DNA of 64,000 bases, taken from positions 186,001-250,000 of the IMG/VR virus record IMGVR_UViG_3300036770_003657; one strand, written 5' to 3'. Positions 9,779 through 41,953 of the stretch are shown here, in pieces. The position numbers and the translations under genes are program-made. Every line of letters starts with the position of its first letter. Position 1 is the stretch's first letter. Under the pieces are notes generated by a model that saw nothing but the letters and a program-made list of their open reading frames with translations, ran no database searches and had not been told where the DNA came from.

Positions 9779-9821
9779 TTTTGCTTCCTTATTAAAGTTG
9801 AAATAGTGTTGCTATGTTCGT

Positions 9822-9850
9822 ATTATACGACAGGTCCACTATCTAGTCAA
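9822..9850 (-). promoter_or_regulatory. sigma70 early promoter (TTGACT-N17-TATAAT)
   Basis: agtcaa at 9845-9850 and attata at 9822-9827. Confidence 0.8.
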
Positions 9851-10241: not shown

Positions 10242-10524
10242 TTTTTAGAGTCGGTCCACTATTCAAAACTACTACAGTGAAGTCTCTACAATCGAATTGG
10301 AGGTTTAATTTTTTGGCAAGATTGATAGCATGTCCAGGATTACTAAATGCTACCTTTTTATATTTAGGTCCTGGATAGCTGATCATACTACTAAAACTTT
10401 TTAAATTGAATGGACGATTTTTATAGAATACAGCCCAAATAGCTTCTGCTTCCAAAATTTGATCTGTTTTGAAATTCTTTTTGCTGGTATTTTCTAATAA
10501 AACTTTTGGTTTTGGTCTACTCAT
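10234..10524 (-). CDS. Hypothetical protein (likely start MSRPKPK at 10524)
   Basis: ORF in operon; GATAAATA late-type box at 10550-10557 upstream. Confidence 0.6.
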   Translation of the reverse strand: MSRPKPKVLLENTSKKNFKTDQILEAEAIWAVFYKNRPFNLKSFSSMISYPGPKYKKVAFSNPGHAINLAKKLNLQFDCRDFTVVVLNSGPTLKNE

Positions 10525-28089: not shown

Positions 28090-28346
28090 TAGATTTTTTT
28101 GGTAATATCCAAAATTGCTTCTACTTCTTTCCAATCATTATCGTAGTTGCTCCAATCACCCTTATGTGCGATTTTGATAGCACGATTGATAACACTGGTT
28201 TTTACGTTTAGTTCTTCGGCTACTGCTTTAACGGTTTCTTTAAGACCTTCTTGGAGATCTTCAATTTCACGAAGAACAGTGCTGCCTTCGTTAATCAATT
28301 TCTCCAATTTTGCTTTTTCTTCAGGTCCGTAAATTCTTGTGGTCAT
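28089..28346 (-). CDS. dsDNA-binding protein (T4 DsbA/GapR-like)
   Basis: Helical EIEDLQEGLKETVKAVAEEL...INRAIKIAHK pattern; GAGGA RBS. Confidence 0.55.
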   Translation of the reverse strand: MTTRIYGPEEKAKLEKLINEGSTVLREIEDLQEGLKETVKAVAEELNVKTSVINRAIKIAHKGDWSNYDNDWKEVEAILDITKKI

Positions 28347-28398
28347 TGACAATCCTCTAAAGTGAATATATAATACATGTATTGTTAACTTAAGTCAA
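28346..28398. promoter_or_regulatory. Overlapping oppositely oriented sigma70 promoters
   Basis: + strand: TTGACA 28346-28351 / TATAAT 28369-28374. - strand: TTGACT 28398-28393 / TATTAT 28375-28370. Both have 17-nt spacers. Confidence 0.75.
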
Positions 28399-28406
28399 GG
28401 TGTTCT

Positions 28407-28730
28407 ATGAAAAAAGTCATTGCTAGTTTACTCGTTGCTTATTCCAGTGCCAGTTTAGCCTATTTGGGCACTTGGAATGATCCCTTGAAGCCATTTGATG
28501 CTACAAAAAATGATATCAGCAAAATGAGCATAACTTGGAAAATTACTGATGATGTAGTTGGCGAATGTAATAAGGCAAATAGGGCTATGGGATTTACCAA
28601 ACCATTAGGTCCTTTGACTGCCTGTAGTTTTTGGAAATTTGATACTTGTACCATTATCACCAGTAAAACTCCTACCATGCATGAAGTTGGGCATGAGCTT
28701 AGGCATTGCTACCAAGGAAATTGGCATTAA
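28407..28730 (+). CDS. Small secreted HExxH protein (mini-zincin-like)
   Basis: Signal peptide MKKVIASLLVAYSSASLA, Cys residues, C-terminal HEVGHELRHC. Confidence 0.6.
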   Translation: MKKVIASLLVAYSSASLAYLGTWNDPLKPFDATKNDISKMSITWKITDDVVGECNKANRAMGFTKPLGPLTACSFWKFDTCTIITSKTPTMHEVGHELRHCYQGNWH

Positions 28731-28751
28731 AAATCTTTTTTGCCTTTTTCT

Positions 28752-29744
28752 CTACGATTTTGCTGGTCTTGGTGCTGATTTAGCACCACTATCACCGCCA
28801 GGGTTAGGAATTCCGCCATTACCTCTTAATTTAGTATGTCTCAGAAGTAATTTATCAACATCTGGATTGCGGCCCATATGCTTGCCTAATTTATCTGCTA
28901 ATAAGGCTAATTCTTGTTCTTCTTCTGGGCTTAATCCACCTGCACCTGCTGCGGCAGGATTAGCAGCAATACCACCTGGTTTACCACCTGGTTTACCACC
29001 TGGAGTATTAGTGCTACCATCTGGACGTGCTCCGTAAAGTGCTAGGCCCCCTGCTGCTGCTAGGGCTGCTGCCGACTTAGCAACATTGTTATTAGATGGA
29101 GTTCTGCCTGTTGGAATCTGTTTGATTAGTTCATCAGCACTTGGTTCTACTTTAGATGTTGCGGCACGACCTATATCATCTGCACTTGAAGCTGCTCCTT
29201 TGAGCCCTGCTTGAGCACTGTATCTAGCTAGAAGGTCATCCAAACCTTGTTTTCCTATATTTGTTACTGTTGGAAATACTTCTGCTCCAATAGCTGCCGC
29301 TTTAGGTGCAAATTGTTCATCTATCTGTGCTAGTTTAGTTCTAATTGCCTTAATTTGATCTACACTATTCATATTAAAATCTTCTTTGACATCTTTTTTT
29401 GTCTGGTTATCTTTATACCATTGTTGTATATCTCTACCAACGTTGGCGGCATCTCCCATGCCACCAAGCGTCCAACCTCCAGGACCAGGAATAAGATATC
29501 CTGCTGCGGCTAATGCTGAAATGACTGCACCGGTTCTATCACCTTTTTGAAACCTATCCCAAGCGTTCTTTAGTGCTAGACCACTGCCTAATCCTGGAAC
29601 CATTTTAGCTAATTGTTTTGTTCCTAGTTCTTTACCAACCACTGCCATACCAGCTGCACCTGCACCTGCATCTTTAGCCAAGTCTAATGCCCCGTAGCCA
29701 GTATCATCTTCTACTAAAGAAATATAATTTTTTATGCTTTTCAT
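28752..29744 (-). CDS. Putative capsid-internal/ejection protein with Gly/Ala-rich hydrophobic segments
   Basis: CTS-like start MKSIKNYISLVE; hydrophobic hairpin-like stretches. Confidence 0.5.
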   Translation of the reverse strand: MKSIKNYISLVEDDTGYGALDLAKDAGAGAAGMAVVGKELGTKQLAKMVPGLGSGLALKNAWDRFQKGDRTGAVISALAAAGYLIPGPGGWTLGGMGDAANVGRDIQQWYKDNQTKKDVKEDFNMNSVDQIKAIRTKLAQIDEQFAPKAAAIGAEVFPTVTNIGKQGLDDLLARYSAQAGLKGAASSADDIGRAATSKVEPSADELIKQIPTGRTPSNNNVAKSAAALAAAGGLALYGARPDGSTNTPGGKPGGKPGGIAANPAAAGAGGLSPEEEQELALLADKLGKHMGRNPDVDKLLLRHTKLRGNGGIPNPGGDSGAKSAPRPAKS

Positions 29745-31069
29745 ATTTTAAAGGCCCTAATTCTATCTAATATTATATCATCGGCTAGGCGATCTACTGA
29801 TTCCTTTTGTGCCTGAGCTGGTGCTGCTGGACTTGCTGCTTGACCGTCTTCTGGAAATGGTTTAAATGTGTACGATCTTCCTGTACGTTCCCAATATCCC
29901 ATTTTTCCAGTTCTTCGATCTCTCGCAGCAGGTTCTCCGTTTGGTCCTTTTTGTGGTGCCGTTGCTGGTGCCGCCGGTGCTGCTGGTGCTGCTGGTGCTG
30001 CTGGCGGCATAGTACCTTGCATGACATGTGGACTAGTTGCTGCCCCAGGAGGTGGATTAGCTGCTCCTCCACCACTCATACCTCTGGCAATTTTGTCCAT
30101 AGTGTCACCTGCTTTTACTACATAAGTACCACCACCTGGCATTTTTAATTGTTGACCAGGATATATTTTATTAATATCTTTGATTTGTGGATTTAATTTA
30201 TGTATGGCCTGTGCCCCTGCACTGCCCTTATATCCTTGTGCAGCAGGTTTATTAGTCTGTTGACTCGCAGGTGGATTAGCAGCACCTCCTGCACCTTTTT
30301 CTAATTTATCTAATAGTTCACCAAATCTTTTTACATCGTTAGGATCAATAGTTCCTGGATCTTCCTCACCTTGATTATTAGTTGATCCAGGAACTTCAGC
30401 AGCAGACGGAGGATTAGTAGCAATACCACCTGGTTCTTGCCAATTAGCTAAATCAGTTCCAGGATTACCTGGTTGTATGTCTGGACTGCGTACTGGATGT
30501 GATGTTGCTACAGGAGCATTGCTACCAGCGTATCCATAATTTTCTGGATCTTCACCACCACCTGCGTCTGCATCGTCAGCCCCTATAGTAGTTGGTGGAA
30601 CATATTCACCTGGATTGGCAGCTATACCTTGATGTTCTTGTCCACCACTCATCACAGGTTGTCCATCACTACTTCTAACTATTTGTCCATCGCTACCACG
30701 TAATGGTTCACGTCGAATATTTGGTGGTTGTGTTTCTCCATCTTCATCTACTCCCATATCCTGCATAAGAGCTTTGGCGATACTACCTCTAAATTCTGGC
30801 ATTGGTGTAGTTTGACTTTGTTTAGCTACCATTCTATAGTCAGGGTGTACTTGAGCTAGACTTTTTTCTGCATCAGCAGCAGCTTGACTAAATCCTTGAG
30901 CTCTTAATTTTTTAATATGTGCTAACCAAGCAGCCACTTTAGCAGCAGCAGTGCCACCCACAAATTCATCTACTTGACCATCTAACGCCATTGGACTAGC
31001 ATCTTCTTTTAGAACTTTTTTACTTTCAATAGCATCCATACGTGCTATCATTGATTTCATATCCATCAT
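29741..31069 (-). CDS. LysM-domain, low-complexity putative virion protein
   Basis: LNPQIKDINKIYPGQQLKMP and YVVKAGDTMDKIA LysM motifs. Confidence 0.7.
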   Translation of the reverse strand: MMDMKSMIARMDAIESKKVLKEDASPMALDGQVDEFVGGTAAAKVAAWLAHIKKLRAQGFSQAAADAEKSLAQVHPDYRMVAKQSQTTPMPEFRGSIAKALMQDMGVDEDGETQPPNIRREPLRGSDGQIVRSSDGQPVMSGGQEHQGIAANPGEYVPPTTIGADDADAGGGEDPENYGYAGSNAPVATSHPVRSPDIQPGNPGTDLANWQEPGGIATNPPSAAEVPGSTNNQGEEDPGTIDPNDVKRFGELLDKLEKGAGGAANPPASQQTNKPAAQGYKGSAGAQAIHKLNPQIKDINKIYPGQQLKMPGGGTYVVKAGDTMDKIARGMSGGGAANPPPGAATSPHVMQGTMPPAAPAAPAAPAAPATAPQKGPNGEPAARDRRTGKMGYWERTGRSYTFKPFPEDGQAASPAAPAQAQKESVDRLADDIILDRIRAFKI

Positions 31070-33061
31070 TTAATCCTTGTCTGATCCATCAGCCTTTTTA
31101 TGACTCTTATAGCCTTTGTTTTTCATATGCCAGGCCAATGCCCATGGGTTCTTTTCCTTACCATCTTTAGTTTTACCCTTGGTTAGTTCAGGATGTTTTT
31201 TCATAGCCTTTACCGTGCCCTTAAAACCAGGTGGGCTTACTTCTTTAAGGCCAAAACTCTGTAGTATACCTTCACTAATGCTTTCCATCTTAACACAATT
31301 GTCTACAGTTTTGCCACCTTTCTTTTTAGTGCCCATACGCTTATAGCCTTTCCAGCAGGCTTTACCGTCTACACCTTTTTGTTTTTCTTCCGCCACACCT
31401 TGCTCTTTGATCTTGTCTTGAATCTTTTTGTAGCGATGAAAGTTAGCATCTTTATCAGCATCAGTCTTGCCAAACTTACCAGCGTCCATCTTCTTATCAA
31501 TTTCACGCTTGGCATATCCTGGAACAACCTTGCGTAGAGTCTGTGGCAAGCCTTCCGCCACACCTTGCTCTGGCAAATTAGGTTTACGATGTTTTCCATG
31601 TGCATTTTTAATACTGGCTTTCAGACTGTTTATCTGGTCTCTGGATGGGAGACCTTTTCTATTGCCAGCAAGATTAAGGCTATGTTTGATGCCGCTACGA
31701 CCAATGCCCTGCCCCTTTTTCAATAGATCATCGTTATCGAATTCACTGCCTACACCACCCATCCTGCGCTTTTGACCCGGATCGTTTTCTGGACGCTCAG
31801 GAAAATCGTAGCCGTACCCAATGCTGTCATAATCGTCGCTATCCCCGGGCTCTTGAGTATACAATCTGTCTTTGTATTTAGGATCACGCCATTTGGCCGC
31901 TTCCGCCACACCTTGCTCTTTGATGTTTAGTTGCTTTTTTGTATAGGCCACTGCGTCATCCAATGCGGCCAACCCTTTCTGTTCTGAATTCTTACTTAAT
32001 CCAGTATCATATAGTTCATCACCGTTATAGATACGCACCTGCCAGCCCATTCCTGTATCAACCAAATCGTGTCTAAAGTTGCCCACCTTGACAGATTTTA
32101 CTACATTCTTTCCCAAGCCTTCCGCCACAGCCTTCTTTTCATCCTTTTTCTTCTCAGGCTTAACAGGTTTAGCCACATCCTTATCACTTACTGGATAGTC
32201 TCTTAAATGACGAGTAGTAGCATTAGGTTTTTTCACAGCCTCTCTAAGCATTTGAATAAGTTTTGGTAGTGATTTACCTTTAAAACTAGCAGACGTTAGA
32301 TCTGGATATTTGTCTAACAAACGATTAATAGTCTGTTGTCTCATTTTATTACTAAAGTCTTGATCATTTGGACCGTCTCTATCTATACGATCTGTACGTG
32401 GCATACGACCACTTTGACTAAATTGATCATCTCTATTACGACCAAACCTACTCTCTGCTGCGCCACCTACCAGTTTACCTTTAGGATAACCTGTTGGTCC
32501 TGGACTACGTAATTGTCCAGCCTGTCCAATTTTGTGTTTACCTAAACCAGCAAAAGGTATACTATTTTCATCTAAGTTTTTACCTTTATGTTTTTCTTTA
32601 CCCTGCTTTTGATCTTTCTTTTTGTCTTTATGTTTGCCTGCTCCAGTTTGTGGACGTAATGGACCTTGTCTTGGCTTTTGCGGCACACGAGCATCTTCCA
32701 TCATACGTTGTACAATACTACGAACTTGTTCTGTACTCTCATAAGATTCTTGTGATGGTAAAGGAGCAGGTGGACGTGGTCGTTGTCTTGGACTAATACT
32801 ATCTAGTGCTTTCTTTGTAGCAGGCCCAATTTGATCAGCACCTACATAGTCAGTCATCTCTCTGCCACCAGTTACGGTGACTATTTGATAAGCATCAGGT
32901 ATTTTTTGACTGATTAAGATCATTTTATTACTTTGCTGATCTAGTACGCCAGCCATACCGTTATAACGTATGTTAGCAAAGCCATCACCCAACTGGCCTA
33001 TTATTTGCATATTAGGGATGTCAGCCTGCTCAACTAGTTGGATGAAGTTTTTAATAGTCAT
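31070..33061 (-). CDS. Modular basic putative capsid-internal polyprotein with EQGVAE linkers
   Basis: Repeated (E)QGVAE/AVAE and hydrophobic-X-E motifs separating K/R-rich modules. Confidence 0.6.
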   Translation of the reverse strand: MTIKNFIQLVEQADIPNMQIIGQLGDGFANIRYNGMAGVLDQQSNKMILISQKIPDAYQIVTVTGGREMTDYVGADQIGPATKKALDSISPRQRPRPPAPLPSQESYESTEQVRSIVQRMMEDARVPQKPRQGPLRPQTGAGKHKDKKKDQKQGKEKHKGKNLDENSIPFAGLGKHKIGQAGQLRSPGPTGYPKGKLVGGAAESRFGRNRDDQFSQSGRMPRTDRIDRDGPNDQDFSNKMRQQTINRLLDKYPDLTSASFKGKSLPKLIQMLREAVKKPNATTRHLRDYPVSDKDVAKPVKPEKKKDEKKAVAEGLGKNVVKSVKVGNFRHDLVDTGMGWQVRIYNGDELYDTGLSKNSEQKGLAALDDAVAYTKKQLNIKEQGVAEAAKWRDPKYKDRLYTQEPGDSDDYDSIGYGYDFPERPENDPGQKRRMGGVGSEFDNDDLLKKGQGIGRSGIKHSLNLAGNRKGLPSRDQINSLKASIKNAHGKHRKPNLPEQGVAEGLPQTLRKVVPGYAKREIDKKMDAGKFGKTDADKDANFHRYKKIQDKIKEQGVAEEKQKGVDGKACWKGYKRMGTKKKGGKTVDNCVKMESISEGILQSFGLKEVSPPGFKGTVKAMKKHPELTKGKTKDGKEKNPWALAWHMKNKGYKSHKKADGSDKD
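31387..32129. repeat. Dispersed 20-bp direct repeat CTTCCGCCACACCTTGCTCT (3 exact copies plus 1 partial), in frame
   Basis: Copies at 31387-31406, 31552-31571 and 31900-31919; partial CTTCCGCCACA at 32119-32129; periods 165, 348 and 219 nt. Confidence 0.9.
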
Positions 33062-34272
33062 TATGCTACCGCTTTCTTCTTTTTAGCAATGGCAATAGCA
33101 GCTTGTTGTTTAGCATTTGCTGCTTCTGTTTTCAAACGACCATCTCGCTCAGCACTCTTTAACAGAGCTGCTCGATCTCCATAACTGCCACGCTTAACAT
33201 CCCTAGCAGCATCCTTTTCACCCTTTGTTGGATTCTTTACGTGCTTCAAAGGATTAAATGCTTCTTTCATACTACACTCTTTCATACCGTGTACTGGACA
33301 ACTTTTACCTTTGGCTGTATGATTACACTTGGCTGATTCGCTAACTTTTTTATCCTTCACAGCCTTCTTCATTGGCTCTTTTTTATTGCCATCCTTGTCC
33401 ATATCTAAAAAGTCTGGTTTAGCCTTTTTACCTTCTTCAAATGGCTTACCTGACTTGGCTGCTGCCTTAGCACGACTGCCCCATACTTCATCTTTAGGAC
33501 TTTCTTTCTTGCCATCACCATCATAATCTTTTTTACTTACTTTCTGACCTTCTCTGGTTTTTACATTTTTGCCTGGAGGTGGAGCAGTAGCACCATCTGG
33601 AGGACTTGGAATATTACCAGTTACACCACCTTTAGGATATAGTTTATTAGTGGGCTTTGGTTGTGCCATTGTATTTTCACTAGTTTTCTTACGTATGCTA
33701 TCTACACTGTAGCCTTGACTCTTATGATCACGACCTGCACGATCTCTTACTTCGCTTTCGCTTTCACCTTCATCTGCATCATAGTGTACATTTTTAGATT
33801 TATTGCCATCTTTGTGCATGAGTTTTACGCTGTACTGACTCTTAGTACTAGTATCAACTTTGCCCTTACGCTTGTCCTTAGCAGTAAAGCCAGTAGCCTC
33901 ATCTACCTTTTCATCCTTTTTCTTCATCTTTTCAGCCTGGGCCTTTTTAAGGGCTTTCATTTTGTCCTTGGCTTCCATTAGTTTGTTTCTAAGGATACGT
34001 TTTTCTTCGGTAGTGTACATATCACTCATTTCAAGTTTTTGTCCATATTCATTGAACTTCATCTCATACTCTAAATAGTGATATACGCTAGCCATATAGT
34101 CTGCTGCTTTAGTAATTTTAGCCTGTATCCACCCTTCTAGTTGGGCATTATCATCCATCATTTTAAATAGTTTTAATGCGTATCTAGCAGTTTTATAAAG
34201 GTCAGCCTTGGCCATTTTACCTTCATCTTCATTCTCTGGGGCGGGCAAACTGCCCTGCATAATAGGATCCAT
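33061..34272 (-). CDS. Modular basic putative capsid-internal protein
   Basis: Short modules (DYDGDGKKES, KPDFLDMDKDGNKKEPMKKA, CNH...CPVHG..EC) separated by x-x-E sites; late box at 34293-34300. Confidence 0.55.
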   Translation of the reverse strand: MDPIMQGSLPAPENEDEGKMAKADLYKTARYALKLFKMMDDNAQLEGWIQAKITKAADYMASVYHYLEYEMKFNEYGQKLEMSDMYTTEEKRILRNKLMEAKDKMKALKKAQAEKMKKKDEKVDEATGFTAKDKRKGKVDTSTKSQYSVKLMHKDGNKSKNVHYDADEGESESEVRDRAGRDHKSQGYSVDSIRKKTSENTMAQPKPTNKLYPKGGVTGNIPSPPDGATAPPPGKNVKTREGQKVSKKDYDGDGKKESPKDEVWGSRAKAAAKSGKPFEEGKKAKPDFLDMDKDGNKKEPMKKAVKDKKVSESAKCNHTAKGKSCPVHGMKECSMKEAFNPLKHVKNPTKGEKDAARDVKRGSYGDRAALLKSAERDGRLKTEAANAKQQAAIAIAKKKKAVA

Positions 34273-34295
34273 ATCTTACTCCGAATTTGTAATAT

Positions 34296-34502
34296 TTATC
34301 GTTTTAACATTGTTCCGCCAAATAAGCTAATATCACTATCTAGTGCATTTTTGGCTGTTCCATTTTTATTTTTTAATGTTTCTACTTTAACTAACTTTGG
34401 TTTTCCGCCTTTATTAGTTATATGTGGGTTGGCTATGGCAACTACATTACCAGCACTGGTGGCTCCTCCGCTTGCTGTTTCATACAGTTCCCTTAGTCTC
34501 AT
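34296..34502 (-). CDS. Small putative capsid-internal protein
   Basis: CTS-like start MRLRELYE. Confidence 0.55.
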   Translation of the reverse strand: MRLRELYETASGGATSAGNVVAIANPHITNKGGKPKLVKVETLKNKNGTAKNALDSDISLFGGTMLKR

Positions 34503-34880
34503 TTATACTCCATATTGATTACGTTTGATTTTTGCTACAGGGCTTACTGTATTTGTGCTTTTCAGTTCTAAGCTACGCATATCACCTTTGTTTAAATCTT
34601 TGTGATTTGCACCTACAGCTTTACTGGCTTTAACAAACATTTCATGTTCTACTTCTGTATAAGGATGTATAGTTTTCTTTTTACCAAACCAACTCTTGGC
34701 ATCTATATCAGGAACACTTTTTCCATCAGTACTGGCCATAGCTTGTCCTAACTTAAAAGCCACGTAGTCGCTATTGGCTCTTTCTGCGTCACTGTAAATG
34801 CTTACACCGCGTGTAGACTCTTTTTGACGTTTAGTCAATTTGCCTTGTTTACGCTCTGCCAGTATTTCTCTAATCTTCAT
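34503..34880 (-). CDS. Putative capsid-internal protein
   Basis: CTS-like start MKIREILAE. Confidence 0.55.
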   Translation of the reverse strand: MKIREILAERKQGKLTKRQKESTRGVSIYSDAERANSDYVAFKLGQAMASTDGKSVPDIDAKSWFGKKKTIHPYTEVEHEMFVKASKAVGANHKDLNKGDMRSLELKSTNTVSPVAKIKRNQYGV

Positions 34881-36238
34881 TGCTTGAACATATCCTTAGA
34901 TCCAAATACTTGGCCAAACTTATCACCTAACATATTCTTTAACTTAGTACGTTGATCCGCTCTAAGTACAATCATACCATTATCAAACTTGTAGCCCATG
35001 TCACGTAATTTGGGCATTAGGTCAGTAGCCAACAATTTGTACCTAAATACATCTGGTTGTGCCACAGCATGACCACCCATTTGGCTATTTGGTTTACCAG
35101 GTATGGGCGCACGACGTCGTTTACCATCTAGACCAACGACAAAATGATCTACACCTTTAGGTTTAGTTTCTGGTTCTACCCCAGCATCTTTACCTTTATA
35201 CAGTTTAAAGCGTTCATCAGCACCACCACCTATAAGGCTTTTTAATTCCTTTAGTTCAGGTCCAAAGTCACTGCGTAGAGCACTTAGAGGGAATACAAGT
35301 TCAGCAGCCTCGCCACCAATAAAGTCCACGTCACGTATAGCATCTTCTAATTCACCAAGAGCACTGCTGGCATCAGTAAATTCAAAGTTCACTCTAAGTG
35401 GACGACCTTTGCCACCCTTCTTATCTCTAATGCCTACATTTTGACTACGCTGTACAACTTCTTCTGGGAATGTAGCAAAGTCACCTATAACCTGTATTAG
35501 ATTAGTTCTTGGGTTTAGTTTGAATATAATGTATAGTGTGCCACTAGGCTGTTCTAATTCATATAGTCTCATTTCTTTAGCCTTCTTTTTTGGTTTAGCA
35601 GCAGCGAATTGTCCCATACGCTCCTTGGCCTTACGCATAAGATCCATAACTTGATCATCATCTATTTCTGGACTCATAGCATCACGCCATACTGCAAATT
35701 GTTCTTGTTCACTCTTAGTGGGATCTGTTAATACTTGACGCATTGGTGTAGCACGTGGGCCTTCTTCACCAGCACTAGGGTCACCTGTTTCTTGACGGGC
35801 TATAACGTCCAAGTTATCAAACTTAAATGGAATATCACCTGCCTTATTAGGTTTACCGTTATATTGTTTAAGATATTGGAATGCCTGTTTTTGATCAGCA
35901 CCAACAACCACTGTGACGTTGTTATAACCTTGTTGATTTAGGTTAGTCAATACTCTAGTTAGATCAGGCAGTTCATCTGTGGCAGTTTGAAATATATGCC
36001 CTTGTTCTGGGAATACCTTTTTGTATATGGCCAATTTTTCTTCAGGTTGTAAAGGATCATCTGGACCATATGTTCTACTCACTACAAAATATGGATCACC
36101 GCCCATCTTGTCAGCATAGGTTATAACACTACTGGCCAACATCATATGACCTTTATGACCCATACCTCTGCCCCAACCTACCACAGCAGTTGATCCTTCT
36201 CCTGTTCTATCTAGTTCAAATAATTGTCTAAGCCTCAT
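34877..36238 (-). CDS. HxGH cytidylyl/nucleotidyltransferase-like protein with extra C-terminal domain
   Basis: GWGRGMGHKGH, DPL..EEK, VVVGADQ and RATPMR; start MRLRQLFE at 36238 is ATGA-coupled. Confidence 0.72.
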   Translation of the reverse strand: MRLRQLFELDRTGEGSTAVVGWGRGMGHKGHMMLASSVITYADKMGGDPYFVVSRTYGPDDPLQPEEKLAIYKKVFPEQGHIFQTATDELPDLTRVLTNLNQQGYNNVTVVVGADQKQAFQYLKQYNGKPNKAGDIPFKFDNLDVIARQETGDPSAGEEGPRATPMRQVLTDPTKSEQEQFAVWRDAMSPEIDDDQVMDLMRKAKERMGQFAAAKPKKKAKEMRLYELEQPSGTLYIIFKLNPRTNLIQVIGDFATFPEEVVQRSQNVGIRDKKGGKGRPLRVNFEFTDASSALGELEDAIRDVDFIGGEAAELVFPLSALRSDFGPELKELKSLIGGGADERFKLYKGKDAGVEPETKPKGVDHFVVGLDGKRRRAPIPGKPNSQMGGHAVAQPDVFRYKLLATDLMPKLRDMGYKFDNGMIVLRADQRTKLKNMLGDKFGQVFGSKDMFKQ

Positions 36239-38115
36239 TCGCCTTTCCTTGGAGCCCAATTAGCTTGGTCAATTGCTTTGACAAATTGTCCAGGTAAATC
36301 ATTTTGAAATGCTACACCAGGATGAGCACTAACATATCCTTCTGGTTTTGTCTGTCTTATACCATTGTGTGTTCCACTGCTTAGGTTTTGAATCATTTCC
36401 AGTTTAGCTCTAGTTAGTAATTCTACAGCAGTTAATACAGCATCCATACCAGCACGATCTTTAAGTATCATATCTGCTTGTTTAGAGCTGGTATTAGCAG
36501 TGACCCAATCAATAAATTTTTGTTTAACTCCTGGAATACGTAGGTTTTGATTATAAAATTTGTACAATACATCACCTGGTTTACTTAGTCCAGGCTTAGG
36601 AGCTAGGAAGTTGTTGATTAGATTGGCATTTTCCTGTATATATGATTGAACACTATCTAAACTATTTTCTGTAAATTGTGGAGTTTGTTCAGTATACGTT
36701 GTACCCTGCACTATGGTATATGGGGTGCTCAAGCTTTCTGGGTCTGGATAACGTCCTTCATCACTGCTGCCCAAACTTTCATAAAACCCTGTAGCAGCCA
36801 CCATAACTTTGGCATTGCGAATCTTACGACCAAGATCACTATTTTTTCCTATATGGAATGTAGTAATATTTGGAGTGAACTCATACTCTTGCGTTTTTGG
36901 ATTAAGTATTGGTTTGGCACTTTGTCCATCTGGTTTAGTACCTGGATAAAATAATAATCCACCTTCTAAGAATCCATCATCTGGACTGGCCTGTTCAAAG
37001 AAGGGCCAAAGGCTGGCTAATTGTTTGGCATATTGACGTCGTTGTGCTATTTGATCAGGATCAGCTTTACCCGTACCCATTAGGAACTTTTGTACTTCTT
37101 CTGCACTGCGGGGTATGGTGCTTATGCCATTTTGTAACTCTGTCTTACCACGTTTAAGATATTCCCAAGCATTTTTAGGAATCATCATAAACTGTCCATC
37201 CTGTTTGCCCCAATATACTACAGGGCTACCATCCCATTTAAGTTCTATATTACCACCTTGTGTGCTCATATAACGAAGTCGTTCTACAGCATGTAGTCCG
37301 CCCTTGGCACCATTAGTAAAAACTAGATCTTCAATATGTTGATATTTGCGACCTATTGTTGGTGCTGCTGCTTCGAAAAACTTCTTCTCAGGTCCTTTTA
37401 ATGGCGCACTTTTCCAACTTTGTCCACTACTAGCCAAGCTATAAATTTTTTCACGTTGCGTTATAGGTAGTGCATTCATTATACTTTCTACACTGCCTAA
37501 ATCCTGACTACTTGCTCTTGGACCCAATAATTTCTGTGCTATCTCATCCATATCAGTTGATATAAGGTTAGCCTTTTTACCTTTATCGTCTCTAGCAAAT
37601 AACCCTTCATCTGGACTCCATAGCATACCTTGACTGCTAGCAAGAGCATTCATAACCATCTGTTTGTGTACACCTTTATAAGGACTATCTTTTGGTATGC
37701 TATGAACATGGTACCTATGTACCTGTTGTGCATTGGGCACAACTTTTATATCTACCTGATGAAAACTGCGTCCGAATGGTAGTTTAACATGGACCTGTGT
37801 ACCACTTTTTTTAGTATCAAGACCTTTACCTTGTAGGAATCGTTCTAACTCTACTCTAACACCTTTTGCATCTTGTTGTTGAAATACTTTAGCAGCTACA
37901 TTAGCATCTGCCATAACATCAAGATCACCACTCATAACACCTGGTGTAGGTGTTGCTCCACTGCCTATACGATATAGTTTAATGCCTGTACCCTGTAGGT
38001 AGCGTTCCAATTCTGTTTCTAACCTAGGTGCAAGACTTTGGTCAAATGGTTCAACATCGTCCCAAATATTGCCACCTTCCTTAAGTGGCCTAGCAAATAG
38101 CTCACGAAGGATCAT
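36235..38115 (-). CDS. Two-domain protein: Pol-beta-type nucleotidyltransferase + ligase-like (KxDG) domain
   Basis: IGSG...SGDLDV...HQVDI in the N-terminal half; HIED, ELKWDGSP and PEGYV in the C-terminal half. Confidence 0.62.
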   Translation of the reverse strand: MILRELFARPLKEGGNIWDDVEPFDQSLAPRLETELERYLQGTGIKLYRIGSGATPTPGVMSGDLDVMADANVAAKVFQQQDAKGVRVELERFLQGKGLDTKKSGTQVHVKLPFGRSFHQVDIKVVPNAQQVHRYHVHSIPKDSPYKGVHKQMVMNALASSQGMLWSPDEGLFARDDKGKKANLISTDMDEIAQKLLGPRASSQDLGSVESIMNALPITQREKIYSLASSGQSWKSAPLKGPEKKFFEAAAPTIGRKYQHIEDLVFTNGAKGGLHAVERLRYMSTQGGNIELKWDGSPVVYWGKQDGQFMMIPKNAWEYLKRGKTELQNGISTIPRSAEEVQKFLMGTGKADPDQIAQRRQYAKQLASLWPFFEQASPDDGFLEGGLLFYPGTKPDGQSAKPILNPKTQEYEFTPNITTFHIGKNSDLGRKIRNAKVMVAATGFYESLGSSDEGRYPDPESLSTPYTIVQGTTYTEQTPQFTENSLDSVQSYIQENANLINNFLAPKPGLSKPGDVLYKFYNQNLRIPGVKQKFIDWVTANTSSKQADMILKDRAGMDAVLTAVELLTRAKLEMIQNLSSGTHNGIRQTKPEGYVSAHPGVAFQNDLPGQFVKAIDQANWAPRKGE

Positions 38116-38498
38116 TTATATAAACCATCCTTAATATTTTGTATTTCAGTTTCGTAGATATGATGTGCTACTTGCTCTTTAAAATCTTCTTCTAAATTAT
38201 CATCTAGTTCTCTTACTGGAAATTCTTTTTTATATTCATCGTAGGCTTTTTCGATAACTTTTTTAAACACTCTGTGGCTAAATTCTCCACCACTTTCATA
38301 TTGAGCTTTACAGGTTTTTAGTATAGGAAAAAAGTGACGACGATAAAAGTCATCATTGTGATGCATGAAAAATACAAGATCTTCTGCTAGATCAAATTCA
38401 TATTTTCCTTGATCATCCTTAATAATTTTACTGGGACCAGTGTTTAACATGTCCTCAATGGGCATTTCCTTATTCCCAAACATTTCAAATAGTTTCAT
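38112..38498 (-). CDS. Hypothetical protein (CTS-like start MKLFEMF)
   Basis: GGTGAT RBS; late box at 38550-38557. Confidence 0.55.
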   Translation of the reverse strand: MKLFEMFGNKEMPIEDMLNTGPSKIIKDDQGKYEFDLAEDLVFFMHHNDDFYRRHFFPILKTCKAQYESGGEFSHRVFKKVIEKAYDEYKKEFPVRELDDNLEEDFKEQVAHHIYETEIQNIKDGLYK

Positions 38499-38549
38499 AT
38501 CACCAAGCCTTATCATGCTATGTTAATAACCATAGCCAGTCTTACTTAA

Positions 38550-38557
38550 TATTTATC
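38550..38557 (-). promoter_or_regulatory. T4-like late promoter box GATAAATA
   Basis: Same 8-mer in intergenic/5' positions at 10550, 34293, 47887 and 55876; TAAATA variants at 42801, 43861, 54670 and 61945. Confidence 0.6.
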
Positions 38558-38579: not shown

Positions 38580-39227
38580 CTATTTTTCGCTGATGACTCG
38601 ATCTATACGCTGTATATTTGAGCCAATAAACATCTGTACCATGCTCAAACTTTTGGCATCTTTAACATAAAAGTAACTGTCACCTACTCTGTAACCACGC
38701 TTTACGTGGCGTTGACAGCGTTCTGGCATACGAATTTTGTCATTATCCCTACACCAATTAAAAAAGCTTTCATTATTATCTATACGATTACTAATGGTCA
38801 CTTTATAGTCATAGTTAATACGTTTGAGATATATTGTATTCTTTTCTAAAACTGGAGTAGTTTCAGAAGGGATACTAATATATTTAATTTGATTTTTAAG
38901 ATTTTTGCTAACTGAATAAAAATCATCGTAGCTATCTGTGTAATAACTTACAAAAGGGCTACTGACCATTACTTTGTATTCGTGGCCAGCAGTCTGAAAA
39001 GTTCTTGCTATTAATAATGATATATCATAATCTGACTTCTCTCCACTCCAAATATAGGGAGGAAATTTATCTACACTTTTCCAATATAATATTTTACTAA
39101 CAATTAATTCCATATCCTTATTCCTAAACATAGGCGCAAATTTAGTTACAAGAACTATTTTGTACCTATATTTGTCTAGGAATAGTTTATTGGTTCTCTT
39201 CGTGGGTAACAATGTTAGGTGATTCAT
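38580..39227 (-). CDS. Hypothetical protein
   Basis: 215-aa ORF downstream of clpA. Confidence 0.55.
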   Translation of the reverse strand: MNHLTLLPTKRTNKLFLDKYRYKIVLVTKFAPMFRNKDMELIVSKILYWKSVDKFPPYIWSGEKSDYDISLLIARTFQTAGHEYKVMVSSPFVSYYTDSYDDFYSVSKNLKNQIKYISIPSETTPVLEKNTIYLKRINYDYKVTISNRIDNNESFFNWCRDNDKIRMPERCQRHVKRGYRVGDSYFYVKDAKSLSMVQMFIGSNIQRIDRVISEK

Positions 39228-41451
39228 TTTCAGTTACTTTACTAGTTCTTACACGTTTTGTCACGGTGATTTGGTCATTTTCCAAACCAATTACTGCCGA
39301 ACCACCATCCTTAAGTTCACCAAACAGCATCATACGGCTTAGGGGACGTTTAATCTCCTTGTCTATAACACGTTGTAGTGGACGGGCACCCATTTTACTA
39401 TCAAACCCCTTTTCAATCAAGTTATTTATAGCAGCATCGTTAATACGTATGCGAATGCCCTTGTCTGATACTTGTCGTTTAAGTTCATCAATAAACTTAA
39501 CAACAACCTTATACATTGTATCTTTATTCAACTTGGTAAATGTGATTATGGCATCCAAACGATTTCTAAACTCAGGAGCAAAGAATTTCTTTAGATCCTT
39601 GTCATCATAGTCTTTTTCCTGCTTACCAAAACCAATTTGATTCTTTTCAGCAGCTTGGGCACCAGCATTAGTAGTAAGGATTAGGATAATGTTTCTACAA
39701 TCTGCTTTCTTACCATTGCTACCAGTTACAAACCCATTGTCCATCATCTGTAATAGTATTGTACTAACATCTGGATGACTCTTTTCTACTTCGTCAAAAA
39801 GTAACACACAGTATGGATTTTCTTGTAATTGAGTGATAAGTAATCCTGCATTTTCCTCAAAGCCAACATATCCTGGAGGAGATCCAATCAACTTGCTCAC
39901 GCTGTGCTTTTCTTGATACTCACTCATATCAAAGCGTATAAGTTTTACACCAAGATGTTTGGCTAATGTTTTAGCTGTTTCTGTTTTACCACAACCAGTT
40001 GGCCCCATAAAAACAAATGATCCAATAGGCTTGTTTTCAGGCTTAAGACCAGCACGAGCGACTAGTATTTTATCTACAAGTTCTGTAACAGCATCATTCT
40101 GCCCAAATACTTCATCATTGATTTGCTTTTCAAGATTAGCCAAGTTATTGCTCTCTGTTTCAGCAATTTGTTCTTCAGGCATTTGAATAGCCTGACTTAG
40201 CTCAAATTGAATTTCGTGTTCACCAATAATACGTTCCTGATCTAATTTAAGATTAAATCTACTACAGGCACAATCAATAAGATCAATTGCTTTATCAGGC
40301 AACTTTTTCTCTGTTTGATACTTTATGCTAAGTTTTACAGCAGCTTGAATAGCATCATCTGTAATTTTAACTTTATGGAACTGCTCGTAGTATTTTTTAA
40401 CACCTTTAAGGATTTGAATAGTTACGTCGTATGTTGGTTCATCCACCGTGATACGTTGGAACCTACGCATTAGAGCACGATCTTTTTCAAAGTACTTGCG
40501 ATATTCCTCCCAAGTTGTACTGGCCACTACTTTGATATTACCCTTGCTTAGAGCAGGTTTCATCATGTTAGCAAGGTCATTAGCACTATTACCTGCACTG
40601 CCTGCTCCGCTGATCATATGAGCTTCATCAATAAACAATATTGTTTTACCCTTGGTCTGTAGGCCTTTGAGCACTAGTTTAAAACGTTCTTCAAAATCTC
40701 CACGATATTTACTACCAGCTAACATGCTGCTAATATCCAAACTATAAACCTTGTAATCCTTTAAAAACTCCGGTACATGACCTTTTTCAATATTAAAAGC
40801 CAGTCCTTCTGCAATAGCAGTTTTACCAACACCTGGATCACCGACAAGCATAACATTATTTTTATTGCGACGTCCCATGGCTAAGGCAATATTTTCCAAT
40901 TCTGTCACTCTGCCTACCACTGGATCAACTTTATTACGTTTGACAAGATCATTCAAATTTGTAGTAAATGCTTTTATGGCACGATCTACTTGATGATCAG
41001 TGACTTCTTCTTCTTCAGTTTGTACTTCACTATTGAGATAATCTGCAAACTTATTCTTATCTACCCCAGCCTGTTGAATATAATAACTGGCATAGCTACG
41101 CTTCTCACTCATAATGCTTAGGAACACGTCACTAAGTTCCATAGTTTGTCGGCCATTAAATAGGGCCTGTGTAAATGCACGATTCAATACACGCTCTACT
41201 GCCTGTGTCTTTTTTGGTTTAGTGGCTTCTTCTTTAATAATATCATCAAGTTTATTCTTTAAGTAGTGCTCTAAATTCTTTTTAATGTATTCTGAATCAG
41301 CGCCATATGTTTGTATAGTATTAACAAAATGCTCTTCACCTAACATTGAGTATAATAAATGTTCTAATGTTAAGTATTCATGTTTATAGTTTTTAGCTAG
41401 TTCGATGGCCTGTTCAAAAACTTTTTTAAGATTGTCGCTGGGCTCTACCAT
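39187..41451 (-). CDS. clpA: ClpA-like Hsp100 ATPase
   Basis: Clp-N HEYLTLEHLL; two AAA modules GDPGVGKT and GPTGCGKT; RFDMSEY, IGF loop and GARPL. Confidence 0.92.
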   Translation of the reverse strand: MVEPSDNLKKVFEQAIELAKNYKHEYLTLEHLLYSMLGEEHFVNTIQTYGADSEYIKKNLEHYLKNKLDDIIKEEATKPKKTQAVERVLNRAFTQALFNGRQTMELSDVFLSIMSEKRSYASYYIQQAGVDKNKFADYLNSEVQTEEEEVTDHQVDRAIKAFTTNLNDLVKRNKVDPVVGRVTELENIALAMGRRNKNNVMLVGDPGVGKTAIAEGLAFNIEKGHVPEFLKDYKVYSLDISSMLAGSKYRGDFEERFKLVLKGLQTKGKTILFIDEAHMISGAGSAGNSANDLANMMKPALSKGNIKVVASTTWEEYRKYFEKDRALMRRFQRITVDEPTYDVTIQILKGVKKYYEQFHKVKITDDAIQAAVKLSIKYQTEKKLPDKAIDLIDCACSRFNLKLDQERIIGEHEIQFELSQAIQMPEEQIAETESNNLANLEKQINDEVFGQNDAVTELVDKILVARAGLKPENKPIGSFVFMGPTGCGKTETAKTLAKHLGVKLIRFDMSEYQEKHSVSKLIGSPPGYVGFEENAGLLITQLQENPYCVLLFDEVEKSHPDVSTILLQMMDNGFVTGSNGKKADCRNIILILTTNAGAQAAEKNQIGFGKQEKDYDDKDLKKFFAPEFRNRLDAIITFTKLNKDTMYKVVVKFIDELKRQVSDKGIRIRINDAAINNLIEKGFDSKMGARPLQRVIDKEIKRPLSRMMLFGELKDGGSAVIGLENDQITVTKRVRTSKVTENESPNIVTHEENQ

Positions 41452-41953
41452 ATTTTTTCCTTATTTTGTCGAATTTTTTCATAGCCATACTTTGCTTGAG
41501 TTTACTTACACGATCTGTAAAACAGATACCATCTAAGTGATCTAGTTCATGTAAAAAACATTTAGCATCTATGTCATGTAGTGATATTACACAATTATTG
41601 CCATCGCTGTCAAGATACTCGGCAACAACAATTTTTGGTCTTTTAACTGGAATAAGCATTTTAGGAAAGCTCAAACATCCTTCAATTGACTCCAATAATT
41701 GATCACTTGCTGCCTGTAGCCTTGGGTTAAACATGGCAAATGGTCCTGTTTCTAAACTAATGTCTCTAGGAAAGATAGTAATTACTCTAGCTCTAAGCCC
41801 AACTTGATTTCCACTAAGACCTATACCTCTTTCTTTAACCATTAGTTCTATCATTTCTTTTTCAATTTGTTTTGGATCCATTATGGGATTCTCAAAATCA
41901 AAATCAGGCATTTGTTCTCTTAGTATGTCATTTGGAAAGGTTATTAAGTTCAT
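41426..41953 (-). CDS. def: Peptide deformylase
   Basis: GIGLSGNQ, EGCLS and HELDHLDG. Confidence 0.92.
   Translation of the reverse strand: MNLITFPNDILREQMPDFDFENPIMDPKQIEKEMIELMVKERGIGLSGNQVGLRARVITIFPRDISLETGPFAMFNPRLQAASDQLLESIEGCLSFPKMLIPVKRPKIVVAEYLDSDGNNCVISLHDIDAKCFLHELDHLDGICFTDRVSKLKQSMAMKKFDKIRKKYGRAQRQS

What the first reader, a model, noticed from the sequence alone, without database searches (positions are those of the whole stretch)
28752..38498. Ten-kb block of genes sharing a capsid-targeting-like N-terminal peptide
Seen: starts in this block read MKLFEMF, MILRELF..LKE, MRLRQLFE, MKIREILAE, MRLRELYE, MTIKNFIQLVE, MMDMKSMIARMDAIE and MKSIKNYISLVE, downstream of late GATAAATA boxes (38550, 34293). 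Known: T4 internal proteins carry a ~10-aa capsid-targeting sequence (IPIII MKTYQEFIAE) removed by gp21 after E. Inference: this is a dedicated payload locus of proteins packaged into the head and injected with the DNA.
Basis: partly seen in the sequence, partly recalled or inferred. Interest (0 to 1): 0.72.

Follow-up and report, generated by a model that had tools for sequence, protein, structure and literature searches.

The report
Head-cargo gene block with portable leader peptides
A 10-kb late-gene block of an uncultured 400-kb freshwater phage encodes enzymes and bead-like polyproteins that nearly all begin with a T4-style capsid-targeting leader, so they are probably loaded into the phage head, cut free by the head protease and delivered with the DNA.

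Summary
Eight of nine consecutive minus-strand genes (window 28752-38498) start with M-[KR]-φ-[KR]-[EQN]-φ-φ…φ-x-E. This matches phage T4's capsid-targeting sequence MKTYQEFIAE in register.

The motif is far from random:
- In this genome it marks 6/9 block genes against 9/409 others.
- In about 46 related metagenomic loci it marks 108/256 block N-termini against 2/311 in the flanks.

The genome is a 399,796-bp T4-superfamily jumbo phage with a gp21-type prohead protease.

The leader behaves as a portable module. Domains that are fused here are separate genes elsewhere, each with its own leader. Inside the polyproteins a second junction, [EQK]-G-V-A-E, plays the same role. The same domain follows either a leader or a GVAE.

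GVAE is also fixed at the DNA level (GGTGTGGCGGAA). It coincides with recombination breakpoints between near-identical phages and in other metagenomes.

Relatives of the block's cytidyltransferase were found in purified virions of T4-like cyanophages by mass spectrometry.

Packaging, cleavage and injection in this phage are inferred, not shown. I rate it a new variant of the T4 internal-protein system.

The parts
38550..38557 (-). Late-promoter-like box GATAAATA ahead of the first transcription unit (p134, p626, p453, p125, p68)
   Evidence: Position. NATAAATA is depleted in the genome overall, yet 52 genes have ATAAATA within 100 nt upstream, structural genes among them.
38112..38498 (-). p134 (128 aa from the conserved ATG). 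It starts MKLFE|MF. Function unknown.
   Evidence: Orthologues start MKIFELF, MRIKELLE or MKLFEFF. No family match.
36235..38115 (-). p626 has four parts:
- Leader MILRELFARPLKE|GGN, residues 1-13.
- Pol X-like nucleotidyltransferase domain, about residues 20-230 (G51 S52, D64, D66, D122).
- Disordered linker that keeps a relic leader end, FFE248|AAAP.
- DUF6267 ligase-like domain, residues 249-626, with an invariant K293-W-D-G.
   Evidence: - Residues M1 L3 R4 E5 F7 E13 G14 G15 N16 and E248 are invariant in 13 orthologues.
- AF2 model: pLDDT 69.6, linker 231-259 below 50.
- Foldseek matches to pol lambda/beta: E 4e-5, probability 1.0.
- DUF6267.
- Weak matches to ligase nucleotidyltransferase domains, Z about 5.
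- The two halves are separate genes, each with its own leader, in L047, L078, L080 and L081.
34877..36238 (-). p453 has three parts:
- Leader MRLRQLFE|.
- Cytidyltransferase/NMNAT-like domain (GHKGH), residues 1 to about 220.
- An internal relic leader, MRLYELE| at residues 223-229 (window 35552-35572), followed by a C-terminal domain of unknown function.
   Evidence: - phrog_3041 cytidyltransferase, E 6e-22.
- Homologues in T4-like cyanophages and pelagiphage HTVC008M.
- The S-SCSM1 homologue is a mass-spectrometry-detected virion protein and starts MKSFLQFLKE.
- C-terminal parts vary among homologues, with QGVAE at the junction.
34503..34880 (-). p125, a small basic protein with leader MKIREILAE|
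   Evidence: K+R fraction is 20%. Orthologues start MKIRELLE or MKVKEIILE.
34296..34502 (-). p68, leader MRLRELYE|. It is followed by TASGGATSAGNV, which copies the predicted mature N-terminus of the major capsid protein.
   Evidence: The MCP reads YLAE41|TASAGTTSAGNV. This stretch aligns to the start of mature T4 gp23*. The peptide is conserved in L012, L015 and L019.
34293..34300 (-). Late-promoter-like box GATAAATA ahead of the second transcription unit (p403, p663, p442, p330)
   Evidence: It lies 20 nt before the ATG with an SD-like GGAG between.
33061..34272 (-). p403, a leaderless, Lys-rich protein present in all related loci. It carries the motif KPDFLDMDKDGNKKEPMKKA.
   Evidence: The 23-residue motif is 91% identical to S-SCSM1 gp280, annotated as a virion protein. 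The motif occurs in 11 related loci.
31070..33061 (-). p663, a polyprotein with leader MTIKNFIQLVE|. Four internal junctions divide it into cassettes:
- AVAE314 (window 32120-32131)
- QGVAE387 (31901-31912)
- QGVAE503 (31553-31564)
- QGVAE558 (31388-31399)
The last cassette holds a phrog_4359/phrog_10346-type domain.
   Evidence: - Junction positions.
- The three QGVAE sites share an identical 18-mer built with rare codons.
- Similarity to L011 stops exactly after the AVAE314 codon.
- Loose ends and joints of metagenome contigs fall at these sites.
- The C-terminal domain also occurs as a stand-alone gene with its own leader elsewhere in the genome.
29741..31069 (-). p442, leader-like start M-MDMKSMIARMDAIE|. 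It is Ala/Gly/Pro-rich with a LysM domain and four GG[IA]A[AT]NP repeats.
   Evidence: LysM, E 4e-6. Repeats. The MDMK-type start recurs in relatives, for example MDMKKYITLVE and MDMKRILQAVDG.
28752..29744 (-). p330, leader MKSIKNYISLVE|. It is Ala/Gly-rich with one GGIAANP repeat.
   Evidence: It lies in the segment that is replaced in L011.

Best explanation
The block is the main cargo locus of a T4-superfamily jumbo phage.

Proposed mechanism:
1. Late in infection the block is transcribed from two T4-type late promoters as two tightly coupled operons.
2. Most products carry an N-terminal amphipathic leader of 5-15 residues, M-[KR]-φ-[KR]-[EQN]-φ-φ…φ-x-E. It works like the T4 capsid-targeting sequence and takes the protein into the scaffolding core of the prohead.
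3. The gp21-type prohead protease then cuts after the Glu of the leader. It also cuts after the Glu of the internal junctions ([EQK]-G-V-A-E, and relic leader ends such as FFE|AAAP and MRLYELE|).
4. One leader can therefore load a string of small domains or two enzymes, which are then separated inside the head.
5. The released proteins stay in the head with the DNA and enter the cell with it. They include a Pol X-like nucleotidyltransferase, a ligase-like DUF6267 domain, a cytidyltransferase/NMNAT-like enzyme, small basic proteins and LysM or low-complexity proteins.
6. The 12-nt sequence encoding GVAE also serves as a standard junction at which cargo cassettes are exchanged by recombination. 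This makes the distal part of the locus hypervariable.

Shown here: the motif, its enrichment, its portability, the equivalence of the two junction types, the DNA-level conservation, the breakpoints, the late boxes and the protease gene.

Shown elsewhere: homologues detected in virions of other phages.

Inferred: targeting, cleavage and delivery in this phage.
For: 1. Leaders match the verified T4 IPII/IPIII leader MKTYQEFIAE|A in register. The hydrophobic positions correspond to T4 residues 4 and 7, which matter for targeting. The φ-x-E end corresponds to residues 8 and 10, which matter for processing (PMC9026906).
2. The genome encodes a Peptidase_S77 protease with E 3.5e-26 and E 2e-14 to T4 gp21 structure 5JBL. 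It sits in a T4-order head module of portal, small core proteins, protease, scaffold and MCP. The 80-aa gene at the gp67 position starts MILRELF, like p626.
3. Enrichment and replication; selection at the peptide level.
4. Portability:
   - p626 is two genes in L047, L078, L080 and L081, each with its own leader (MKLKE|GGN; MRLRQLFE|AAPPAVGRKY). The fused form keeps FFE|AAAP in a disordered linker.
   - p453 keeps an internal MRLYELE where homologues have KPKKKQGVAE.
5. Junction equivalence: the NFADGR domain follows GVAE in the 752-aa protein of this genome and follows leaders in L035, L080 and L081. A second domain does the same in L067 and L071.
6. GVAE occurs at 0.34 per 1000 aa in block proteins against 0.015 in flanks. 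In this genome QGVAE occurs only in leader-bearing proteins. Some homologues end in …QGVAE.
7. The MCP's predicted propeptide end, L-A-E41|TASAG, lies next to the start of mature T4 gp23*. p68 repeats that post-cleavage peptide.
8. Late boxes stand before both units.
9. Virion evidence in relatives:
   - The S-SCSM1 NMNAT/cytidyltransferase and its neighbours are virion proteins by mass spectrometry.
   - Cytidylyltransferase T4-GC190 gave 25 counts in S-SM1 virions.
   - PMC10665884 states that cytidyltransferases and kinases are frequently detected in cyanophage virions.
10. Leader-bearing genes elsewhere in the genome are plausible ejected proteins: PG_binding_1 + phage tail lysozyme, a T7 0.7-like kinase and a GNAT-containing polyprotein.
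Against: - There is no virion proteome, no N-terminal sequencing and no cultured host for this clade.
- The leader pattern was defined after seeing the data.
- The receptor of the T4 targeting sequence is unknown, so binding cannot be modelled. A protease-peptide complex prediction gave no answer.
- p403 and several block genes of relatives (Dps-like, and 76-aa and 95-aa families) lack a leader.
- The authors of the cyanophage virion proteomes caution that abundant proteins could co-purify.
- The strong nucleotide conservation of the GVAE codons shows that something other than protease recognition also acts there.
- MDAIE in p442 has Ala at P3, outside the classical T4 L/I-x-E rule.
Confidence: 0.62

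Rival explanations
1. The leader and GVAE are mainly DNA-level module boundaries, that is, recombination linkers like the boundary sequences of mosaic phages. They have no targeting role, and the shared peptides are a by-product of cassette shuffling.
For: - GVAE is encoded by GGT GTG GCG GA[AG] in about 80% of sites, although GTG makes up 10% of Val codons and GCG 3% of Ala codons.
- The 11-mer occurs 78 times in the loci, always in the same strand and frame.
- The breakpoint between the window and L011 lies exactly after the AVAE codon.
- Metagenome contig ends cluster at these sites.
Against: - Leader codons vary freely while the peptide is kept.
- The leader matches the T4 targeting sequence at the functionally mapped positions.
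- The junctions always end in Glu preceded by a hydrophobic residue at P3, which is the protease rule.
- A pure recombination linker would not need to sit at every N-terminus.
- The two roles do not exclude each other.
Confidence: 0.12
2. The leaders are propeptides or recognition tags for the phage's own ClpA-like unfoldase and ClpP. This could be quality control or timed degradation or activation of toxic late proteins. It would have nothing to do with head loading.
For: - A ClpA-type ATPase (Clp_N, two AAA modules, D2-small, an IGF loop) lies two genes upstream of the block in every related locus.
- A ClpP-like gene is present elsewhere in the genome (N-terminus read by eye).
- ClpXP/ClpAP substrates can carry N-terminal Met-basic-hydrophobic motifs (my own knowledge of Flynn et al. 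2003).
Against: - The synteny may just be conserved gene order.
- Clp recognition does not explain the φ-x-E ends, the GVAE junctions, the MCP-like peptide of p68 or the virion detection of homologues.
- T4-like cyanophages carry leader-bearing cytidyltransferases next to a helicase-primase gene. No Clp gene is annotated in the stretches read there.
Confidence: 0.07
3. The proteins are processed late proteins that act in the infected cell, for example polyproteins matured in the cytoplasm for DNA repair or cell-wall work. They are not packaged.
For: The Pol X-like, ligase-like and NMNAT-like enzymes and the LysM protein could all act inside the producing cell. The authors of the cyanophage proteomes allow for co-purification.
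Against: - In T4 the gp21-type protease is active only inside proheads (established T4 knowledge, PMC9026906).
- The leader is shared with a head-module core gene.
- Detection in virions has been repeated in several independent cyanophage studies.
Confidence: 0.12
4. Chance resemblance of Met-Lys-rich N-termini.
For: MK starts are common in AT-rich genomes. The core pattern alone matches 20% of flank N-termini.
Against: The strict pattern gives 42% against 0.6% and p = 6e-8 in the genome. Leader residues are invariant in orthologues that are only 56-91% identical overall.
Confidence: 0.01

Closest known systems
Phage T4 internal proteins IPI, IPII, IPIII (and Alt) with the capsid-targeting sequence, processed by gp21
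   Same: - An N-terminal leader of about 10 residues with the same pattern and register.
- An ending in hydrophobic-x-Glu.
- A gp21-type protease.
- Late expression.
- Unrelated mature parts.
- A hypervariable locus.
- Small basic products.
   Different: - Cargo here includes large enzymes (Pol X-like + ligase-like, 626 aa; cytidyltransferase, 453 aa) and multi-cassette polyproteins with internal GVAE junctions.
- The genome has about 18 leader-bearing genes.
- Leaders range from 5 to 15 residues.
- The phage is a 400-kb jumbo phage only distantly related to T4 (DNA polymerase 43-51% identical to the Atu_ph07 and Rak2 groups).
Ejection and inner-body proteins of phiKZ, 201phi2-1 and SPN3US, cut many times by a gp21-related protease after Glu
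   Same: - Many head-internal proteins.
- Multiple cleavages after Glu within one precursor.
- Propeptides thought to target the proteins to the head.
   Different: Those phages use a short S/A/G-x-E logo, have no shared N-terminal leader, and belong to another lineage with a phage nucleus and virion RNA polymerase. In the present phage the junction is a fixed GVAE that is also conserved as DNA.
Virion-associated cytidyltransferase/NMNAT-like proteins of T4-like cyanophages (T4-GC190; S-SCSM1 ORF91)
   Same: - Homologous N-terminal domain (28-32% identity).
- Gene neighbourhood: DUF6267 sits beside the cytidyltransferase in S-PRM1 and three genes upstream in HTVC008M.
- Leader-like starts MKSFLQFLKE and MKTLKELL.
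   Different: In the cyanophages the module lies beside the helicase-primase gene. It is not known to be part of a large leader-bearing block, and processing has not been reported.
PeSL mobile regulatory cassettes that mediate modular shuffling in T4-type genomes (PMC2839356, PMC4122927)
   Same: Short conserved DNA motifs at module boundaries that coincide with insertion and replacement breakpoints between close relatives.
   Different: PeSLs are intergenic promoter and stem-loop units. The GVAE 12-mer lies inside reading frames, always in one frame, and also encodes a putative protease site.

Membership tests
T4-type capsid-targeting sequence / internal-protein system | Short N-terminal propeptide (10-19 residues in T4) shared by otherwise unrelated proteins | tested here: met
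   Eight of nine block genes and about ten other genes carry it. The mature parts are unrelated.
T4-type capsid-targeting sequence / internal-protein system | The propeptide ends in the gp21 cleavage motif (L/I)-x-E | tested here: met
   The leaders end in LVE, LVE, LYE, LAE, LFE, LKE and LFE. The exception is AIE in p442.
T4-type capsid-targeting sequence / internal-protein system | The genome encodes a gp21-family prohead protease | tested here: met
   PF03420 at 89.7 bits, above the cut-off. E 2e-14 to 5JBL.
T4-type capsid-targeting sequence / internal-protein system | Late expression from a TATAAATA-type promoter | tested here: inconclusive
   GATAAATA boxes stand before both units, and the motif is concentrated upstream of genes. 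No transcript data were examined.
T4-type capsid-targeting sequence / internal-protein system | The leader is sufficient to take a protein into the prohead | not testable with these tools
   This needs reporter fusions. Portability between domains is indirect support only.
T4-type capsid-targeting sequence / internal-protein system | The leader is removed by the protease, and the mature protein is present in virions and ejected | not testable with these tools
   Only homologues in cyanophages have virion mass-spectrometry data. The complex prediction gave no answer.
Family X DNA polymerase / Pol-beta-type nucleotidyltransferase (N-domain of p626) | Palm fold with hG[GS] and three carboxylates | tested here: met
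   Foldseek probability 1.0, about 205 aligned columns and about 20% identity to pol lambda. G51, S52, D64, D66 and D122 are invariant. The fingers and 8-kDa domains are absent, so polymerase activity is not implied.
ATP-dependent polynucleotide ligase / covalent nucleotidyltransferase (DUF6267 domain) | Motif I KxDG on a ligase nucleotidyltransferase fold | tested here: inconclusive
   KWDG is invariant, including in the cyanophage and pelagiphage members. Structural matches are consistent but weak: Foldseek E >= 0.03, VIA Z about 5. There is no sequence match to solved structures.
phiKZ-type inner-body / ejection protein system | Chimallivirus lineage with virion RNA polymerase and an S/A/G-x-E cleavage logo | tested here: not met
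   The DNA polymerase, MCP, portal and protease are of T4/Rak2/Atu_ph07 type. The junction logo differs.

The most novel reading that the evidence does not exclude
The 12-nt GVAE element is a dual-purpose junction. As protein it is the prohead-protease site that separates cargo beads. As DNA it is a standard splice point at which co-infecting phages swap cargo cassettes. The result would be a built-in shuffling system for injected effectors, in which one leader loads any combination of cassettes. It would be a phage counterpart of polymorphic-toxin architecture.
Probability: 0.35. Interest if true: 0.85.

Novelty: new variant of a known kind. Interest (0 to 1): 0.7.

Why it matters
If correct, T4's targeting-leader mechanism is not a peculiarity of the T-even phages. 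It would be a general loading system of the T4 superfamily, scaled up in jumbo phages.

In these phages it would carry whole enzymes and strings of small domains, loaded by one leader and cut apart in the head. That gives a sequence rule for predicting which genes of uncultured phages encode injected proteins: leader, hydrophobic-x-Glu end, GVAE junctions.

The rule points to candidate first-minute counter-defence or DNA-end-repair enzymes: Pol X-like, ligase-like, NMNAT-like, kinase, and sigma-region-4 fusions in relatives.

It would also explain why cytidyltransferases keep turning up in cyanophage virion proteomes. Finally, it offers a natural, portable tag set for packaging foreign proteins into large capsids.

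Tried and rejected
- **Near-identity DNA search of the phage collection:** no match.
- **Sinorhizobium phage Phosso, the nearest cultured relative by DNA polymerase:** it has no such block beside its polymerase. No cultured proxy with a proteome was found for this clade.
- **Sequence searches of p626 and DUF6267 profiles against solved structures:** only noise.
- **Protease plus GVAE peptide complex prediction:** score 0.00, no answer, so it is not used as evidence.
- **First structure job for the DUF6267 domain:** I dropped those rows and did not send them elsewhere.
- **Exact 6-mer test for junction equivalence:** it found only one domain. A BLAST version found a second.
- **S-SCSM1 gp282:** it is not DUF6267, so virion evidence for the DUF6267 domain itself is missing. 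I could not link T4-GC15, a virion protein of matching size in Table S8, to DUF6267, because the sequence file is truncated.
- **Sigma-70 promoter and terminator scan of the block:** no more hits than shuffled sequence.
- **RNA-level explanation of the leader (downstream box):** rejected because codons vary.
- **Literature searches for DUF6267 and QGVAE in phages:** nothing relevant.
Full report
**What the window is.** The window is bases 186001-250000 of a single 399,796-bp IMG/VR virus record with 36.6% G+C. Its family-B DNA polymerase is 43-51% identical to those of jumbo myoviruses of the Atu_ph07, Phosso and Rak2/CBB groups. The genome has a T4-order head module: portal, small core genes, a gp21-type protease, scaffold and a gp23-type major capsid protein. 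No cultured phage shares the block at the DNA level.

**The observation.** Nine tightly coupled minus-strand genes fill window 28752-38516, with start and stop codons overlapping or abutting.
- Two mechanical ORF starts need correction. The real starts are the ATG at 38498 and the ATG at 36238. Both are confirmed by orthologues and by about 100 of the 120 closest database homologues.
- The ninth gene (403 aa) has no leader.
- GATAAATA sits at 38550-38557 and 34293-34300.
- ATAAATA-type boxes are under-represented overall: 11 in the window against 33 expected.
- Yet 52 genes have ATAAATA within 100 nt upstream, structural genes among them. This is the behaviour expected of a T4-type late promoter.

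**Is it more than chance?** I used a fixed pattern, written after seeing the data.
- 6 of 9 block genes match against 9 of 409 elsewhere (p = 6e-8).
- 1.1% of internal Met positions match.
- Shuffled N-termini give 4.2 +/- 2.2 matches against 12 observed.

Independent replication comes from 80 IMG/VR loci that hold a 55-100% identical homologue of the 626-aa protein. The comparison below used the 46 of them in which the ClpA-type gene could be located.
- In these 46 loci the block lies between a ClpA-like gene and the DNA polymerase.
- 108 of 256 dereplicated block N-termini match, against 2 of 311 flank N-termini.
- Position by position the leader reads M, [KRDL], [LI], [RLK], E, [LIF], [FLI], then E or N.
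- Codons at these positions vary synonymously, so the peptide is what is selected, not an RNA element.

**Comparison with T4.** I fetched T4 ipII and ipIII; both start MKTYQEFIAE followed by Ala. MKIREILAE, MRLRELYE, MKTLREYINIVE (elsewhere in this genome) and the rest align with it in register.
- Hydrophobic residues fall where T4 has Tyr4 and Phe7.
- A hydrophobic-x-Glu end falls where T4 has Ile8 and Glu10.
- In T4 the first pair matters for targeting and the second for processing (PMC9026906).

**The leader is a portable module.** The 626-aa protein is a fusion. In L047, L068, L078, L080 and L081 its two halves are separate genes, and each has its own leader.
- The N-domain gene starts MKLKE, MILLE or MKLLE, followed by GGN.
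- The DUF6267 gene starts MRLRQLFE or MKIRELLSE, followed by AAP…GRKYQHIEDL.
- In the fused form the invariant residues include M1, L3, R4, E5, F7, E13-G-G-N and E248-A.
- The interdomain stretch 231-259 is predicted disordered.
- It still reads FFE followed by AAAP. That is the end of a leader.

The 453-aa cytidyltransferase likewise holds an internal MRLYELE at residues 223-229. This is exactly where many homologues have KPKKKQGVAE.

**A second junction, GVAE.** The 663-aa protein has KKAVAE at residue 314 and [EQ]QGVAE at 387, 503 and 558.
- In relatives, [EQK]GVAE occurs 23 times in block proteins and once in flank proteins of equal total length.
- One protein has six copies, spaced 43-78 residues apart.
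- 59 of 120 cytidyltransferase homologues hold at least one GVAE or an internal leader.
- Some of these homologues end in …QGVAE.
- In this genome QGVAE occurs only in leader-bearing proteins.

The two junction types are interchangeable.
- The NFADGR… domain follows GVAE in the 752-aa protein at genome position 285181.
- The same domain follows MKISEIIVE, MFLRELTE or MKITDLIE as separate genes elsewhere.
- A second domain (…WSxKYKSSINCS…) behaves the same way in L067 and L071.

The simplest reading is that both junctions are cut after Glu by the head protease. One leader would then carry a string of beads into the prohead.

**Links to the head.**
- The 80-aa gene between portal and protease sits at the position of T4 gene 67. 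It starts MILRELF, like p626.
- The major capsid protein aligns to mature T4 gp23* from its residue 38. A Leu-Ala-Glu41 site just there is followed by TASAGTTSAGNV.
- The 68-aa block protein reads MRLRELYE followed by TASGGATSAGNV. This is the same peptide after the same kind of site.

**What the cargo is.**
- *p626, N-domain:* a Pol X-type palm and thumb fold with an intact G-S and three-carboxylate signature. Foldseek gives probability 1.0 with about 205 aligned columns.
- *p626, C-domain:* DUF6267. It has an invariant KWDG, shared with cyanophage and pelagiphage members. It gives weak but consistent matches to RNA and DNA ligase nucleotidyltransferase domains. I treat the ligase call as a lead, not a finding.
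- *p453:* a cytidyltransferase/NMNAT-like enzyme with a GHKGH motif.
- *C-terminal parts of the p453 family:* its conserved N-domain is joined to variable C-terminal parts in relatives. These include sigma-70 region 4, ParB_N, GNAT and NTP_transf_2. This is the pattern of a carrier with exchangeable payloads.
- *Leader-bearing genes elsewhere in the genome:* a peptidoglycan-binding tail-lysozyme protein, a T7 0.7-like kinase, a GNAT polyprotein, and DUF6321 and PGDYG proteins.

**Virion evidence from relatives.** The cytidyltransferase and DUF6267 genes lie side by side in cyanophage S-PRM1. In pelagiphage HTVC008M they lie three genes apart.
- In S-SCSM1 the homologue, annotated NMNAT, starts MKSFLQFLKE. 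It and four neighbouring genes are annotated as virion proteins from mass spectrometry (PMC9602691).
- p403 shares a 23-residue, 91%-identical motif with one of those neighbours.
- Sullivan et al. found the cytidylyltransferase T4-GC190 in S-SM1 virions with 25 counts.
- PMC10665884 notes that cytidyltransferases and kinases are detected repeatedly in cyanophage virions. It also warns of possible co-purification.

**The unexpected part: DNA-level conservation and shuffling.**
- GVAE is encoded by GGT GTG GCG GA[AG] in about 80% of sites across diverged loci.
- In this genome GTG supplies 10% of Val codons and GCG 3% of Ala codons.
- The 11-mer occurs 78 times in the loci. It is always on the coding strand and always in frame.
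- The window and L011 are about 95% identical over 16 kb. That identity ends one base after the AVAE314 codon and resumes 3.8 kb later. The cassettes between are different, and only the last ~75 residues of the polyprotein are shared.
- I laid contigs from four subsurface and freshwater metagenomes on the stretch. Ten of the 24 listed loose ends fall within 6 nt of three of the four junction 12-mers.
- Several joints link one junction to another.
- Depth rises nine-fold over one cassette.
- Contigs can break for assembly reasons, and some joints have short sides. I therefore count as support, not proof.

Together these results show that the junction is also a recombination boundary. That explains the hypervariability of the distal block, much as in the T-even internal-protein loci and the PeSL cassettes.

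**Rivals.**
- A pure recombination-linker reading does not explain the freely varying leader codons or the match to T4.
- A ClpA/ClpP tag reading rests only on synteny.
- Cytoplasmic processing without packaging conflicts with the prohead-restricted activity of gp21-type proteases and with the repeated virion detections.
- Chance is excluded.

No direct test of packaging was possible, and the complex prediction gave no answer.

**Verdict.** The system is a new variant of the T4 targeting-leader and internal-protein system. It is enlarged to enzymes and cassette polyproteins, and it has a junction that is conserved both as peptide and as DNA.

Noticed in passing
window 28346-28730 (+ strand): A 107-aa plus-strand ORF (28407-28730) has a signal-peptide-like start and an HEVGHELRH zinc-protease-like motif. 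It follows a perfect sigma-70 promoter (TTGACA-17-TATAAT, 28346-28374). It lies inside the segment that is replaced in the near-identical relative L011. No family match.
   Followed up: partly
whole genome (G000), e.g. window-external genes at 81624, 88994, 285181, 388081: Late-promoter boxes ATAAATA fall into two spacing classes relative to the ATG. In 16 genes the spacing is 4-5 nt with no Shine-Dalgarno sequence, which suggests leaderless late mRNAs. In the other class it is 15-23 nt with GGAG-like sites.
   Followed up: partly
window 39187-42770 and G000 268444-269037: The phage encodes a ClpA-type unfoldase (with an IGF loop), a peptide deformylase and a DnaJ-like protein directly upstream of the block in all relatives. 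A ClpP-like gene lies elsewhere. Any functional link to the leader-bearing proteins is untested.
   Followed up: partly
window 28752-31069: The motif GG[IA]A[AT]NP recurs five times in the two adjacent Ala/Gly/Pro-rich proteins p442 and p330. It is absent from the related loci examined. Its meaning is unknown.
   Followed up: partly
window 33061-34272; L091 6937-8499: The motif KPDFLD[ML]DKDG[ND]KKEPMKKA has a DxDxDG, calcium-loop-like core. It is almost identical in the jumbo-phage clade and in a virion protein of the T4-like cyanophage S-SCSM1, although the proteins are otherwise dissimilar.
   Followed up: partly
G000 about 10200 (+ strand), outside the window: One more copy of GGTGTGGCGGAA lies in a stretch (8981-10501) where my gene caller placed no gene. 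I did not examine it.
   Followed up: no
L028, L032, L036, L047, L078, L080, L081 block regions: Relatives carry leaderless genes inside the block. One is a Dps/ferritin-like 145-aa gene (by eye: MDEKYHLALKTAFASEYAF…FHWNV). The others are 76-aa and 95-aa families. In this genome the Dps-like gene lies elsewhere, at G000 383772-384212.
   Followed up: no
window 28400-34300 in public runs: Parts of this stretch occur in many lake, freshwater, aquatic and subsurface metagenomes, 20 runs in all. The phage clade is therefore widespread in fresh water.
   Followed up: partly
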